From assembly GCA_951406725.2 (NCBI GenBank), contig OX597834.1, positions 8,742,001 to 8,806,000 of the forward strand: DNA of 64,000 bases. Reading direction: 5' to 3'. Origin of the DNA: Octopus vulgaris. Lineage: Eukaryota. The notes beneath the pieces were generated by a model that was not told the DNA's origin, searched no databases, and saw only the letters and a program-made list of their open reading frames with translations. The position numbers and the translations under genes are program-made. Each line of letters starts with the position of its first letter. The first letter of the stretch is position 1. This document shows, piece after piece, positions 5,034 to 58,830 of this stretch.

Positions 5034-5035
<2 letters not shown>

Positions 5036-6344
5036 TGCAAAGGCTACCTTTATCAAAGGAAAAATGACAGAAACATCTAACGTTAACCTTGACCAACAGA
5101 ATGTCATAAAAGAACTAGACCCAGCGGAGAGCTACAAGTACCTAGGGGTAATTGAAGGGAACGGAATAAGGCATTCAGAGATGAAGGAAAGGATCAGGAG
5201 AGAATGCTATCGAAGAGTGAGAGCAATACTCAAGACAGAGCTGAATGCAAGAAACAGGATCGAAGCAATCAATGCATTAGCTATACCAGTCGTGACTTAC
5301 AGTTTCAATATTGTTAACTGGTCAATTACTGAAATATGTCAGCTCGACAGAAAAATAAGGAAACTGTTGACAATGCATAGAATGCACCACCCTAAGGCAG
5401 ATACAGAACGACTCTATCTGCCAAGAAAGGAGGGAGGTCGTGGTCTTTTGCAACTGGCAATAACAATGAAGATTGCTACAATTGACCTAGACACCTACCT
5501 GAAAAAGTCTGAAGACTGGATGTTAAAACTTGTCTCAAAACATGAAAACAAGAAAGCATCATACTCAGTCACAAAACAGGCAAAGGAATATCTAAGTTAC
5601 GGCAAATACCCAAAGAGAGCGAATAATGCAGATATCGACAAAGCCCTGACCCATCAATGGCTAATGGCCTCTGGCTTAAAATCTGAAACAGAGGGCTTTA
5701 TCATAGCAGCTCAAGATCAATGCCTACCAACAAGAAACTACCAGGCCAACATATTAAAGATCAGAAGCAGTCCAACGTGTCGTGTATGCAAGCAACAAAA
5801 TGAAACCATTGACCATGTGGTCTCCAAGTGCAGTCTTCTAGCGCCTACAGAGTATCTCAACAGGCACGATAGAGCTGCACAATATATTCACTGGGTAATC
5901 TGTAAAAACCTGGATTTGCCCCATGAAAAAAACTGGTGGGAACACAAACCACCCCCAGTGCTTGAAAATGACCACATCTCACTCTTCTGGAACTTCACCA
6001 TTCAAACTGACAGGAAGATAGATGCAAATAGGCCAGACATCATATTGAAAGACTTCAAACAAAGAACATGCCTCCTCATTGATATGACTGTCCCAATCGA
6101 TATAAACGTATCTGTCAGGACCTACCAAAAACTGAGCAAATATAAAGATCTTGAAATAGAAATCAGCAAAATGTGGAAGCTGAAGACTAAAACAATACCT
6201 GTTGTCATAGGTGCCCTGGGAATGATAGAAAAAGGGGCTGATAGCTACCTAACTCAGATACCAGGAAACCCAAAAATGGCAGAAGTTCAAAAGATAGTGC
6301 TCATGGGAACTGCTCATATCCTACGCAAAATACTCTCTATGTAA
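5034..6344 (+). CDS. C-terminal part of RLE-type retrotransposon protein: end of RT/thumb, CCHC zinc knuckle, restriction-like endonuclease
   Basis: Stop-free frame from CAKATF. Motifs: YKYLG; RLYLPRKEGGRGL; CRVCKQQNETIDHVVSKC; RHD; RPDIILKD...LID...K..KY (PD-(D/E)xK type). Probably non-functional because 5'-truncated. Confidence 0.9.
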
Positions 6345-29510: not shown

Positions 29511-29544
<34 letters not shown>

Positions 29545-29704
29545 GTTGCATACTGTCAACTTAACGTGACATCCCTGTAAGGGAATTACACCACCGCTGT
29601 TTAGCCCTAGGAAGCATCGACGCTTCCTTTCGGCCTTGACACATTTCCTGTGTCCTTATATATTTACGAAGGGAAGACAAACACCCCCAACAGCTAGGCC
29701 TGCA

Positions 29705-29750
29705 TCTAGAGACATGCATGTTTCTGGGTCTTGTCCATCATCAGTCTAGA
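29705..29750 (-). ncRNA. Minimal type I hammerhead ribozyme
   Basis: Minus strand: TCTAGA-CTGATGA-TGGA(CAAGA)CCCA-GAA-ACATGCATGT-C|TCTAGA. All core nucleotides are canonical; predicted cleavage after C at 29711. Confidence 0.85.
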
Positions 29751-29881: not shown

Positions 29882-29927
29882 TCTAGACTGACGATGGGCA
29901 AGACCCAGAAACATGCATGTCTCTAGA
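29882..29927 (+). ncRNA. Minimal type I hammerhead ribozyme
   Basis: TCTAGA-CTGACGA-TGGG(CAAGA)CCCA-GAA-ACATGCATGT-C|TCTAGA: 6-bp stem I, 4-bp stem II, palindromic stem III. Predicted cleavage after C29921. Confidence 0.9.
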
Positions 29928-30145
29928 TGCAGGCCTAGCTGTTGGGGGTGTTTTATCTCCCCTTCGTAAATATATAAGGACACAGGAACTGTGTCAAGGC
30001 CGATAGGAAATGTCGATGCTTCCTAGGGCTATATAGCGGTAGTGTAATTCCCTTACGGGACTGTCACGTTAAGTTGACAGTATACAACCACTCTATCGCT
30101 CCACCACCGTACATATCTCTATGAGATATTTAGAAATTTAATATT

Positions 30146-44497: not shown

Positions 44498-44588
<91 letters not shown>

Positions 44589-44591
44589 CAT

Positions 44592-44696
44592 AAGTTCCTT
44601 GTCTTTCCTGATGAGAAGACAGCATAATGCACCCTTAATTCCTTCGGAATTAAGAACAGGCAGTCTTCGAAACATGTGTCGAGAATAAAGGAATTT
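44592..44696 (+). ncRNA. Type I hammerhead ribozyme with extended stem I and branched stem II
   Basis: Core CTGATGA at 44608-44614; stem II GAAGAC/GTCTTC; GAAA at 44669-44672; stem III AC(ATGT)GT; GTC| cleavage after 44680. Stem I is 4 bp + 3x3 internal loop + 9 bp (AAGTTCCTT/AAGGAATTT). Confidence 0.9.
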
Positions 44697-44735
44697 TGTT
44701 AAATCGTCGTTCGACTCCATTCTTTCATTTATCTA

Positions 44736-44883
44736 TAGTAAAAAAAAAACACAAATTTCCACACGAAAGCACGTGATTTCTGCCCTTGGCATGTAGCTTC
44801 AACCGTGCTTTCTGACGTAAATTTGCTACCCGGGTATCGGTTAACTGAATTATCCATACTAGCATAATTCATTCAACTACTTA

Positions 44884-44886
<3 letters not shown>
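44736..44886. repeat. ~150-bp direct repeat, copy 2
   Basis: See 42801-42949. Lies about 40 nt downstream of the HHR. Confidence 0.92.
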
Positions 44887-44940
<54 letters not shown>

Positions 44941-56774: not shown

Positions 56775-57526
56775 CGTTCCCCCAGCGGGGATGCGATTCG
56801 AACTGTTATCCTCATTAAGACGGAAAAAGTATTATAGGTTTCCCTATTTTGGGATAGTCAATTTATTATTGTGTGAAAAAATTTAATGATAGCCGTTGTG
56901 GCAACCGCTCCTAGCGGGGGTGAGATTTGAACTGTTGTCCTCGTTGAGAGGAAAAAAAAAAGTAAAAAATTATAGGTTTCCCTATTTTGGGATAATCAAT
57001 TTATTATTGTGTGAAAAATTTAATTTTAGCCGTTGTATGCTCTATTGTGGCAACCGCTCCTAGCGGGGGTGAGATTCGAACTGTTGTCCTCGTTGAGAGG
57101 AAAAAAAAAAGTTGAAACTTATAGGTTTCCCTATTTTGGGATAATCAATTTATTATTGTGTGAAAAATTTATGTTAGCCATTGTAGGCTCTATTGTGACA
57201 GCCGCTCCTAGCGGGTGTGAGATTTGAACTGTTGTCCTCGTTGAGAGGAAAAAAAAAAAGGAAAAAATTATAGGTTTCCCTCTTTTGGGATAGTCAATTT
57301 ATTATTGTGTGAAAAATTTAATGTTAGCCGTTGTAGGCTCCATTGTGACACCCGCTCCTAGCGGGGGTGAGATTTGAACTGTTGTCCTCGTTGTGAAGAA
57401 AAAATAATTATAGGTTTCCCGTTTCTTGGGATACTGCATTTTTATTATTGCGCGAAAAAAAATAATTTCGAACGTTGTAGGCTTTGTTGTTACGTCTCGC
57501 TCTCCAGCGAGGAAGGGATTTGAACT
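56775..57526. repeat. Tandem array, ~148-bp unit, 5 copies plus a partial sixth
   Basis: The anchor GAACT occurs at 56800, 56929, 57078, 57226, 57376 and 57522. Confidence 0.92.
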
Positions 57527-58830
57527 AGGGGGCACGCCGCATGGTGTATGGTGTGGAAGAGGAGCTACGGCGTACGCGGATAACATCTCCATCATTGTGG
57601 CGGATGAAGGCCAGCTTCCAGTGGTAGGAAAGTCCATCAGAAGTTATGAGGCGGTGGCAGGAGCGAAGGTTAACAAGGACAAGTCGGTCGGTGTGCAACT
57701 CGGCACCTGGAGAGGCAACCCGATGCCGTCCAATAACGTCTTGTGGCGTTGGACGGGAGGTCCTGTTAAGCTGCTCGGAGTTTGGATTGGTTCAGACCTC
57801 CAGATAGAGAAAAAGTGTAGTGAGGTGGTCAGCAAGGTGACTGCTTTAACCCAGACCTGGTCTGGGCGGGTGTTATCCTTGCTAAGGAGGGCAGAGGTGG
57901 TGCAGATGTTTATAGCATCAGTAATCACTTACCGTCTGACCGTGGTGCCTTGCTCCGATGTGTGGCTGAACAAGTTGGAGAGAATCCTTTTCTGCTTTTT
58001 GTGGAAAGGAAGAAAGCCACTTATAAAGCGCTCTGTCTACTGCCAGAAACCGCTAAAGGGTGGGCTAGGGATGCCCTGGCTGAAGATGCGAAAATTCGCG
58101 TTGAGGCACGATGGCTTTACCTGGATGGAGAACAGGTGTGGACGCCGCACAGTTAACGTCCTTAACGGACGTTGGTACGTGGATCAAGAAGAGACCTAGG
58201 CTGGGGGACTAGAGTGCCGCCAGGCACTTCAGATACTCTCTCGGACGGGCAATGCCGGCAGCAGGAGTTCCACTGTGGACTTTTATAGCGGGTTAGTAGA
58301 GACCAAGTCCGAAGACGCCTTGGGGGAGACCCTGGGCTACAATGAAAATCAGTTAATCAACCTGTTCAGGAGAACGTTCGGTCCGGGGTATCTCAATAAT
58401 TACTAGAAATCCCTGGCTTGGCAGTGCTTCTGTGCGGCTTTACCGGTTCGTGACAAGCTTTCAAGGCACGGAGGTGCCGTGTCGCCGACATGTCCGAGAT
58501 GTGGATAGGATAGGGAAACCGTCTTGCACGCATTCGAGGAGTGTCTGGAATCGTCGGGACTGATAGCTTTCGTCGAATAACTGATGTCAGTGATGGGAAG
58601 AGTACAGCTATCGGCTGAGTCCATAATAAAGACCGTGCCACCTCCTTCCCTGAGCAGGAAAAGGAAGGCCTGTTTTTTCTGCGTTGTAGCCATACTGAAA
58701 GAAAGAAAGTATGGAAGACGCGTGTGAAAGGCATACTGACTGTTACCTTTGTTTCTGGCCAGGGGTTGGACAACTTATTTAGTTACCACCTCAATAGTAT
58801 TATCAGGCTGGAGAAGAGGTGTCTGGCACG
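57527..58830 (+). pseudogene. Tx1/L1-type LINE ORF2 fragment (RT C-terminal half to CCHC)
   Basis: AYADNISIIV (YADD), GAKVNKDKS, VKLLGVW, FLWKG, KGGLGMP; later CPRCG*DRETVLHAFEEC with stops and frameshifts. Confidence 0.88.

What the first reader, a model, noticed from the sequence alone, without database searches (positions are those of the whole stretch)
44592..44696. Full-length type I hammerhead with a branched (multi-hairpin) stem II
Seen: every invariant core base is present (C3 U4 G5 A6 U7 G8 A9, G10.1-C11.1, G12 A13 A14, A15.1-U16.1, GUC triplet). Stem I is TTTC/GAGA + GTC/ATA internal loop + 9-bp AAGTTCCTT/AAGGAATTT. The 6-bp stem II closes a 42-nt insert holding GCA(TAA)TGC and a 9-bp CTTAATTCC(TTC)GGAATTAAG hairpin. 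Stem III ACATGTGT is self-complementary with two G-U pairs, so it could also dimerise. AATAAA (44684-44689) lies just 3' of the cut. Known: fast natural type I HHRs dock a stem I internal loop onto a short loop 2, and Penelope-type HHRs are usually minimal. Inference: an atypical architecture in which a branched domain replaces loop 2, potentially a new tertiary-contact mode or a switchable ribozyme.
Basis: partly seen in the sequence, partly recalled or inferred. Interest (0 to 1): 0.85.

Follow-up and report, generated by a model that had tools for sequence, protein, structure and literature searches.

The report
Penelope retrotransposon hammerhead, extended stem II
This is a worn, 5'-truncated copy of the self-cleaving hammerhead RNA motif of a Penelope-like retrotransposon, one of about 3,600 in this animal genome; the family keeps an unusually long second stem that is rod-shaped, not branched, and this copy looks branched only because of its own mutations.

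Summary
The motif is real. Every hammerhead core base and all three helices sit at 44592-44696, and chance is excluded: 3,608 genome matches to core plus stem III, against 0-1 for the reversed-pattern control.

It is not a unique gene. It lies in a 302-bp, 5'-truncated fragment (44586-44887) of a Penelope-like element (PLE) inserted into a (TA)n microsatellite. Fuller copies carry an ORF of over 800 aa. Its AlphaFold model matches telomerase reverse transcriptases best, it has a C-terminal GIY-YIG-type motif, and its motifs fit the published Hydra clade.

The "branched" stem II is not supported. In the family consensus and in at least six diverged subfamilies, stem II is one unbranched rod: IIa of 6 bp, a mismatch, IIb of 4-6 bp, an asymmetric internal loop, then the IIc hairpin. 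Both-sided base-pair changes support it. The window copy carries three private substitutions; two of them break helix IIb.

Stem III (2 bp plus a palindromic loop) is the classic PLE type that acts as a dimer. Compact relatives have stem II domains of 12-23 nt, while an Argonauta relative has 95 nt.

Verdict: a known kind (PLE hammerhead) with a new, lineage-specific long-stem-II variant. Catalysis is untested.

The parts
44506..44585 (.). (TA)n microsatellite, upstream half of the insertion target
   Evidence: Other copies of the family also abut (TA)n, (CT)n or (CTAT)n.
44586..44887 (+). 5'-truncated 3'-terminal fragment (pLTR part) of a Penelope-like element. It starts about 2 nt before the hammerhead and ends at the family's long 3' terminus ...CAACTACTTAAACA.
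   Evidence: the window copy covers reference positions 399-720. It is about 96% identical to other copies.
44592..44607 (+). Stem I, 5' strand: Ib AAGUUCCUU (44592-600), internal loop GUC, Ia UUUC (44604-07)
   Evidence: Both-sided pair changes at stem I positions 2 and 5 and in Ib.
44608..44614 (+). Core C3 U4 G5 A6 U7 G8 A9
44615..44668 (+). Stem II domain, 54 nt. IIa is 44615-20/44663-68. The 1x1 mismatch is 44621/44662. IIb is 44622-26/44657-61 and is broken in this copy by C44657 and G44659. The internal loop is 44627-33. The IIc hairpin is 44634-42/44646-54 with a UUC loop at 44643-45; A44637 repairs the family's U.U mismatch.
44669..44680 (+). G12 A13 A14, then stem III (A15.1-U16.1 and C-G plus an AUGU loop; ACAUGUGU is self-complementary with two G.U pairs), then C17. 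The predicted cut is between 44680 and 44681.
   Evidence: The other common allele, ACAUAUGU, is a perfect 8-nt palindrome. Octamer self-duplex energies are -7.0 and -6.0 kcal/mol.
44681..44696 (+). Stem I, 3' strand: GAGA, AUA, AAGGAAUUU.
44733..44887 (+). 'Tail': the segment between the family's two alternative 3' termini (...CATTTAT[C] at 44732/3 and ...CTTAAACA at 44887)
   Evidence: 23 copies end at the inner site and 23 at the outer site. In 7 of 7 head-to-head pairs, one arm has each type of end.
44888..44925 (.). (TA)n microsatellite, downstream half of the target; it continues as a mixed TA/TG repeat
   Evidence: the mir-297-like hits are microsatellite artefacts

Best explanation
The feature is a decayed, 5'-truncated genomic copy of the hammerhead ribozyme carried in the terminal repeat (pLTR) of a Penelope-like retrotransposon. 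The element has Hydra-clade signatures: a telomerase-like RT, a C-terminal GIY-YIG-type endonuclease motif, and insertion into (TA)n.

Shown:
- In the active element the motif lies about 590 nt after the stop codon.
- It lies about 55 nt upstream of the inner of two 3' termini.
- A direct copy also lies upstream of the ORF, giving pLTR-ORF-pLTR.
- Stem II is a conserved, unbranched three-segment rod of about 54-60 nt.

Inferred from established knowledge of PLE, newt and Schistosoma type I hammerheads:
- Stem III has only 2 bp capped by a palindromic tetraloop, so a single motif is unstable.
- Two motifs, on tandem or multimeric transcripts, pair through ACAURUGU to form an 8-bp helix III.
- Each then cuts after C17 (GUC|G), leaving 5'-OH and 2',3'-cyclic phosphate ends and trimming transcripts to unit length.
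- The long stem II most likely acts as a stabilising or protein-binding extension rather than a loop-loop docking partner.

The window copy has no element promoter or ORF and is a relic. Its 6-bp IIa and its core are intact, so it might still cleave in vitro as a dimer.
For: Motif and copy number:
- The core and helices are present.
- There are 3,608 genome copies against 0-1 in the control.

Context:
- The motif is physically continuous with an ORF of 804-833 aa.
- The AF2 model of that ORF (RT core pLDDT above 90) matches telomerase RTs best, at E = 1.7e-8.
- The homologue alignment shows RWK, DKT, YRDD, a CxCX5C linker, YIGxT..R..NH, CxxC..E and CxH. This is the Hydra-clade description of PMC8557442, together with (TA)n targets.
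- Of the listed copies, 14 of 14 close pairs are head-to-head.
- The two discrete 3' ends give a 'tail' signature (compare PMC11167929).

Structure:
- The consensus stem II folds as a rod at -14.9 kcal/mol, and the same rod forms in at least six subfamilies.
- An independent RNAalifold run gives one unbranched stem II, with 7 pairs changed on both sides.
- On 74 sequences, 82.9% of cells are paired, against 39-50% with slid partners. There are 149 double-sided cells, against 72 +/- 9 in shuffles (0 of 500 reach the observed value).
- Examples of both-sided changes: IIa position 5 AU38/GC23/GU8; IIb position 5 AU41/UA18; IIc UA34/CG26.

Literature: the dimer logic and the low in-vitro activity of PLE hammerheads are in PMC4209133 and PMC6765202.
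Against: - No cleavage data exist for this family.
- Published PLE hammerheads cleave poorly in vitro. Catalytic mutants did not affect target-primed reverse transcription of an Anolis PLE, and no RNA-seq ends were found at its cut site (PMC11167929).
- Every genomic copy carries the motif intact across the cut site, so the reverse-transcribed template was either uncut or religated.
- Stem III never varies, so it has no covariation support.
- Two abundant subfamilies (A3, A4) have A.C or U.C mismatches in IIa.
- The covariation sample comes from one genome and a few subfamily-level events. The 103-column alignment was anchored on the proposed helices.
- Rfam models do not score the motif.
- The GIY-YIG domain and the clade placement rest on motifs, not on a profile hit or a tree.
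Confidence: 0.8

Rival explanations
1. One reading: a distinct hammerhead architecture in which a branched, two-hairpin domain replaces loop 2 and provides a new tertiary contact or a conformational switch.
For: The window copy can form GCA(UAA)UGC plus a perfect 9-bp hairpin inside stem II. In subfamily A, the stem I 5' strand (AGUUCC) could alternatively pair with the IIc 3' strand (GGAAUU), read.
Against: - The side hairpin appears only because two private substitutions (44657, 44659) break helix IIb. The majority sequence and all other subfamilies give an unbranched rod.
- Even in the window copy, the unconstrained fold containing that side hairpin mispairs GAAGAC with the stem I strand instead of forming stem II.
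- The alternative stem I/IIc pairing is absent in subfamilies C, D and E.
Confidence: 0.04
2. The hammerhead-shaped fold, and its long stem II in particular, serves mainly as a recognition or positioning structure for the element's RT-endonuclease near the internal site where reverse transcription starts. On this view, self-cleavage is weak or incidental.
For: - The motif ends about 35 nt upstream of the inner 3' terminus, and two discrete termini flank a 'tail'.
- In an Anolis PLE, reverse transcription starts internally at two sites, hammerhead mutants do not affect insertion, and no reads end at the cut site (PMC11167929).
- All genomic copies span the cut site uncut.
- The stem II internal loop keeps a YACC-like motif across subfamilies.
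- Stem II length is lineage-specific: 12-23 nt in relatives, 54-60 nt here, 95 nt in Argonauta.
Against: - The full 13-base catalytic core, which a mere protein-binding hairpin would not need, is kept in all subfamilies and in distant relatives.
- The sampling pattern itself required the core.
- No binding data exist.
Confidence: 0.13
3. The repeat is a non-autonomous 'retrozyme' that spreads through small circular RNAs, rather than being part of an autonomous PLE.
For: - Many copies are short discrete units of about 210 or 375 nt. Their 5' ends cluster 45-60 nt upstream of the hammerhead.
- A recent preprint derives animal retrozymes from PLE pLTRs.
- Two minimal hammerheads lie 359 bp apart on one strand elsewhere in the genome.
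Against: - The same sequence is contiguous with the RT-EN ORF in fuller copies.
- Copies are dispersed or head-to-head, not in short tandem arrays.
- The window copy is solitary.
Confidence: 0.03

Closest known systems
Hammerhead ribozymes of Penelope-like elements ('min-HHRs'; Cervera & de la Pena 2014, PMC4209133; Lunse et al. 2017, cited from PMC6765202)
   Same: Type I topology. Located in the pLTR of an RT plus GIY-YIG element. Stem III is 1-2 bp with a small palindromic loop, implying action as a dimer. Thousands of genomic copies occur, most of them not in full elements.
   Different: The published motifs have helix II of 6-8 bp with a small loop and helix I of 4-5 bp. Here helix II is a three-segment rod of 54-60 nt (17-20 bp) with a conserved asymmetric internal loop. 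Helix I is about 16 positions long with internal mismatches.
Hydra clade of C-terminal-EN+ PLEs (Craig et al. 2021, PMC8557442)
   Same: DKT instead of DKG. RWK-type N-terminal motif. CxxC and CxH around the EN catalytic E and N. Insertion into (TA)n. A canonical hammerhead is present. Found in aquatic invertebrates, including molluscs.
   Different: The family in this genome has lost the CxCX5C linker cysteines that its homologues keep, and carries two long N/S-rich disordered inserts. Clade membership was not tested by phylogeny. Compact-hammerhead relatives (L057-L059) have stem II domains of 12-23 nt.
Newt satellite 2, Schistosoma Sm-alpha and axolotl type I hammerheads (PMC7229834)
   Same: A weak stem III with a palindromic tetraloop. 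Self-cleavage is efficient only as dimers or multimers.
   Different: Those have a 4-bp helix II and conserved loop 1-loop 2 tertiary contacts, and they sit in short tandem repeats or SINE-like units that lack an ORF.
PLE of Argonauta hians (locus L056, GCA_054771915.1)
   Same: pLTR-ORF-pLTR with identical hammerheads 4,355 nt apart. Palindromic stem III (ACUGCAGU). A very long, rod-like stem II. The ORF is the best named homologue, at 34% identity.
   Different: The core is CUGAGGA. There is A.C at 10.1/11.1 and a GUA cleavage triplet. Stem II is 95 nt with a TA-rich distal part. No sequence similarity remains outside the core.

Membership tests
Hammerhead ribozyme, type I | Conserved core: C3 U4 G5 A6 N7 G8 A9; G12 A13 A14; C17 (H17) at the cleavage site | tested here: met
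   (44608-14, 44669-71, 44680). The core was also found by an independent regex scan.
Hammerhead ribozyme, type I | Three helices around the core, with helix I open and helices II and III closed, including G10.1-C11.1 and A15.1-U16.1 | tested here: met
   Helices I and II are supported by both-sided pair changes. Helix III is invariant, which is neither for nor against.
Hammerhead ribozyme, type I | Scores against the curated covariance models (Rfam Hammerhead_1, _3, _II, HH9, HH10) | tested here: not met
   No hit at gathering score or at E<=10. The positive control, a classical PLE minimal hammerhead at 29888-29911, is also missed. This reflects model coverage rather than absence of the motif.
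Hammerhead ribozyme, type I | Site-specific self-cleavage 3' of position 17 | not testable with these tools
   Needs in vitro transcription and cleavage assays, or RNA end mapping.
Hammerhead ribozyme, type I | Helix I-helix II tertiary contacts that give fast cleavage at physiological Mg2+ | not testable with these tools
   No canonical loop 1/loop 2 sequences are recognisable. Stem I has an internal loop at positions 5-7, and stem II has a 1x1 mismatch at position 7.
PLE-associated hammerhead | Lies in the terminal repeat (pLTR) of an element encoding a telomerase-like RT plus a GIY-YIG endonuclease | tested here: met
   Continuity with the ORF. RT fold: telomerase RTs are the best matches. 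GIY-YIG rests on invariant Y..YIG..R..H and a beta-beta-alpha-alpha-beta-alpha model segment at 714-805, with no profile hit.
PLE-associated hammerhead | Helix III of 1-2 bp capped by a short palindromic loop (dimer-type) | tested here: met
   ACAUGUGU and ACAUAUGU
PLE-associated hammerhead | Minimal helix II (6-8 bp, small loop), as in the published min-HHR consensus | tested here: not met
   The domain is 54-60 nt in 3,608 copies. Only 120 copies have 6-34 nt, and these are mostly deletion derivatives or other families.
PLE-associated hammerhead | Insertion architecture: 5' truncation, head-to-head inverted partner, and a 'tail' at one end only | tested here: met
   14 of 14 close pairs are -/+. 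In 7 of 7 pairs one arm is short-ended and one long-ended. The window copy itself is solitary.
Hydra clade of PLEs | DKT motif, RWK motif, CxCX5C linker, CxxC/CxH in the EN, and (TA)n targets | tested here: inconclusive
   DKT, CxxC, CxH and (TA)n are met. RWK is present in homologues and reads RWL here. The linker cysteines are present in homologues but absent in this genome's family. No phylogeny was run.
Metazoan non-LTR retrozyme | Short tandem repeats (about 170-400 bp) that each carry a type I hammerhead, with no ORF | tested here: not met
   Copies are dispersed or inverted and are contiguous with an ORF in fuller copies.

The most novel reading that the evidence does not exclude
The long, covarying stem II rod, with its conserved asymmetric internal loop (YACC), is a functional module added to the hammerhead in cephalopod-type Hydra-like PLEs. 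It could be a docking site for the element's RT-endonuclease that couples ribozyme folding (cleavage or religation) to the nearby internal start of reverse transcription. If so, the ribozyme and the priming signal would form one RNA device.
Probability: 0.18. Interest if true: 0.6.

Novelty: new variant of a known kind. Interest (0 to 1): 0.35.

Why it matters
Hammerheads in Penelope-like elements are a known but functionally unresolved class. They cleave poorly in vitro and seem dispensable for insertion in vitro.

This genome offers a family of about 3,600 copies in which the ribozyme carries a conserved 17-20-bp helix II and sits next to two sharply defined 3' termini. That makes it a good natural system for asking what the motif is for: transcript processing, circularisation, or RT recruitment.

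It also shows why curated models and minimal descriptors under-count such ribozymes. For the window itself the practical result is modest: the locus is an ordinary dead retrotransposon fragment.

Tried and rejected
- Rfam at gathering score and at E<=10 gave no hammerhead. I rejected this as evidence because the control minimal hammerhead is also missed.
- Pfam, NCBIfam, and PDB sequence and profile searches of the ORF found nothing useful. A structure prediction plus fold search replaced them.
- A covariance model, R1, was built, but the own genome cannot be searched with a model. In the window it finds only the query.
I worked around this with pattern searches that print the matched letters.
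- One pattern search was wasted because trailing Ns are ignored.
- Organism identification through a non-LTR RT fragment gave only hits of 57% identity or less from assorted marine animals. A cephalopod is my guess, based on the 2.8-Gb genome, about 30 chromosome-sized contigs, and the best named hit being from Argonauta.
- The supplement of Craig et al. and the Lunse et al. paper are not held.
- RNAcofold of two monomers gives a trivial domain swap and does not test the dimer model.
- I looked for a complement to the stem II internal-loop motif in stem I and in the flanks, as a possible pseudoknot or tertiary partner. None was found.
- Chance occurrence is rejected.

Full report
OBSERVATION.
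- CUGAUGA is at 44608-14.
- A 6-bp helix II (GAAGAC/GUCUUC) encloses 42 nt.
- GAAA is at 44669-72.
- Helix III is A-U and C-G plus an AUGU loop. C17 is at 44680.
- Helix I is 4 bp, a 3x3 internal loop, then 9 bp.

A regex scan of the whole window finds this motif plus a second, unrelated pair of minimal hammerheads at 29721-44 (-) and 29888-911 (+). Rfam reports no hammerhead at gathering score or at E<=10. It also fails on the textbook-like minimal pair, so the negative result says nothing.

IT IS A REPEAT. The window comes from a 2.8-Gb eukaryotic assembly.
- The 113-nt stretch has 1,604 first-look candidates. The 45 scored places are 93-100% identical, and many occur as close inverted pairs.
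- The pattern CTGATGA-N35-65-GAAACATRTGTC matches 3,608 times, against 0 and 1 for the reversed control.
- The same core and stem III with only 6-34 nt between them occurs 120 times. These are mostly internal-deletion derivatives or other minimal families.

WHAT THE REPEAT IS. Other copies extend upstream of the motif into an open frame of up to 804-833 aa. That frame carries RT-like motifs (FDISSFYPSI, YRDD), a DKT motif, and a C-terminal YIGxT..R..NH...CxxC..E...CxH block.

Profile libraries and PDB sequence searches gave nothing. However, 432 homologues exist. The best named one is a hypothetical protein of Argonauta hians.

An AlphaFold2 model built on 26 homologues has pLDDT above 90 over residues about 60-430. 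Its best structural matches are telomerase reverse transcriptases, at E = 1.7e-8, followed by group II intron, retron and LINE-1 RTs. A telomerase-like RT with a C-terminal GIY-YIG-type motif is what defines Penelope-like elements.

The motif set in the homologue alignment is RWK, DKT, CxCX5C, CxxC and CxH. Together with insertion into (TA)n, it fits the published description of the Hydra clade (PMC8557442). I did not run a phylogeny.

The hammerhead core starts 584-611 nt after the stop codon. A direct partial copy of the same terminal region lies just upstream of the ORF in fuller copies. That is the pLTR-ORF-pLTR layout.

All 14 close pairs in the listed part of contig C1 are -/+, meaning head-to-head.

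Forty-six non-redundant copies have two sharp 3' ends. Twenty-three end about 33 nt after the motif and 23 end about 205 nt after it. Nearly all of them abut microsatellites. In 7 of 7 inverted pairs, one arm has each kind of end. This is the PLE 'tail' signature that Frangieh et al. ascribed to two internal start sites of reverse transcription (PMC11167929), although the tail here is about 155 nt rather than 30-40.

The window copy (44586-44887) is solitary and truncated about 2 nt before the hammerhead. It has the long 3' end and sits between (TA)n tracts.

STEM II IS A ROD, NOT A BRANCH. The majority sequence of the subfamily differs from the window copy at four positions, all inside stem II:
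- 44621 (G>A), a shared polymorphism.
- 44637 (U>A), private. It mends the family's U.U mismatch in IIc.
- 44657 (U>C) and 44659 (U>G), both private. These destroy helix IIb (GCAUA/UAUGC).

The majority sequence folds as IIa (6 bp), a G.A mismatch, IIb (5 bp), a 7/2 internal loop, IIc (3 + 5 bp around U.U), and a UUC loop, at -14.9 kcal/mol.

I rebuilt 82 distinct full-length motifs from two pattern searches that print the two halves. They fall into at least six subfamilies, and these fold into the same three-segment rod. In subfamilies A2 and A3 the distal hairpin has shifted register (UUCCU/AGGAA) but still stacks on IIb.

RNAalifold on 20 natural sequences, aligned by MAFFT without structural input, predicts one unbranched stem II and finds 7 pairs changed on both sides.

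I also made a 103-column alignment of fixed blocks from 74 sequences and counted pairs on it.
- 82.9% of cells pair, against 39-50% when partners are slid.
- There are 149 double-sided cells, against 72 +/- 9 in shuffles; 0 of 500 shuffles reach the observed value.
- Clear exchanges: IIa position 5 (AU38/GC23/GU8); IIb position 1 (GC43/GU20/AU8); IIb position 5 (AU41/UA18); IIc (CG40/UA13 and UA34/CG26); stem I (UA60/CG11, UA26/CG19/UG12, CG to UA).

Caveats apply. The sequences come from one genome. Each exchange reflects only a few subfamily-level events. My block alignment was anchored on the helices. Stem III never varies.

RELATIVES ELSEWHERE. The Argonauta element (L056) is a clean pLTR-ORF-pLTR with two identical hammerheads 4,355 nt apart. 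It has a palindromic stem III (ACUGCAGU) and a 95-nt rod-like stem II. Three other homologous elements from public assemblies carry compact hammerheads 100-230 nt after the stop codon, with stem II domains of 12-23 nt and 3-bp stem III hairpins. The long stem II is therefore lineage-specific and not a general property of the clade.

HOW IT MOST LIKELY WORKS. The anatomy above is shown. The mechanism is inferred from established work on PLE, newt and Schistosoma hammerheads (PMC4209133, PMC6765202, PMC7229834).
- A 2-bp stem III is too weak for a monomer.
- Two motifs pair through the ACAURUGU palindrome (-6 to -7 kcal/mol as an octamer duplex) to form a double hammerhead.
- Each cuts after C17, so tandem or pLTR-ORF-pLTR transcripts are trimmed to unit length.
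- Every genomic copy spans the cut site. Templates were therefore uncut or religated, and cleavage must be inefficient, regulated or reversible.

A serious rival is that the fold, and especially the long helix II next to the inner 3' terminus, mainly serves RT recognition.

COMPARISON AND VERDICT. The feature belongs to the known class of PLE hammerheads: location, topology, dimer-type stem III and insertion architecture were all tested and met. It fails the 'minimal helix II' feature of the published consensus. I file it as a new variant of a known kind.

The branched-domain and switch interpretation is not: it arose from reading one mutated relic. AATAAA at 44684-89 is simply part of the stem I 3' strand in this subfamily and is not conserved in the others.

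Noticed in passing
window 29721-29744 (-) and 29888-29911 (+); inverted-repeat arms 29537-29688 / 29945-30096: A head-to-head pair of classical minimal PLE hammerheads from a different PLE family: stem I UCUAGA, CUGAYGA, a 4-bp stem II, and a 10-nt palindrome ACAUGCAUGU as stem III. Rfam does not detect them.
   Followed up: partly
46 copies in loci L001-L046; window equivalents 44732/3 and 44887: The family has two discrete 3' termini, about 33 and about 205 nt after the hammerhead, with 23 copies each. In 7 of 7 head-to-head pairs one arm has each type. This is a PLE 'tail' of about 155 nt instead of the usual 30-40 bp.
   Followed up: partly
loci L005, L008, L012, L014, L019, L024, L025, L027, L028, L030 and others (reference positions 339-357): The 5' ends of at least 13 of 46 copies cluster 45-60 nt upstream of the hammerhead (...ACGGAGUCCAUAGURAUA). 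This gives discrete units of about 210 or 375 nt. The site may be the element's transcription start or a preferred template-switch point.
   Followed up: no
L053:1-2463 (-) and L052:853-3267 (+): The PLE ORF of this genome has two long N/S-rich, low-confidence inserts (residues about 436-514 and 577-700). It lacks the CxCX5C linker cysteines that its homologues keep, yet the element still targets (TA)n.
   Followed up: partly
G000 C1:119516627-119524336: Three RT matches of a related PLE with an 899-aa ORF lie on one strand with a 3,623-3,625-bp period. This is a tandem array of a young family. None of the listed long-stem-II pattern matches falls in it.
   Followed up: no
G000 C4:109156702-109156735 and 109157061-109157094 (both -): Two minimal hammerheads (CUGAUGA-CGAGCAAUAGACU..-GAAACAUAUGUC) lie 359 bp apart on the same strand, in a retrozyme-like short tandem arrangement.
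   Followed up: no
L056:1689-1802 and 6044-6157 (Argonauta hians, GCA_054771915.1): Two identical hammerheads flank a 774-aa PLE ORF. They have a CUGAGGA core, A.C at 10.1/11.1, a GUA site, and a 95-nt stem II whose distal part is a TA-rich, microsatellite-like hairpin.
   Followed up: partly
subfamilies A2/A3 (for example G000 C1:30303582, C1:28482317): G60>A/C breaks the original IIc hairpin, while A66>G creates UUCCU/AGGAA in a new register stacked on IIb, so the rod is remodelled rather than lost. A3 and A4 also carry A.C or U.C mismatches in IIa, yet they are abundant.
   Followed up: partly
window 5034-6344 (+) and 57414-58199 (+): These are open frames of non-LTR retrotransposon reverse transcriptases. 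The first has RVT_1-bearing homologues at 57% identity or less in assorted marine invertebrates. The window is largely repeats and TA/TG microsatellites, and these microsatellites produce spurious mir-297, mir-466 and mir-3149 hits.
   Followed up: partly
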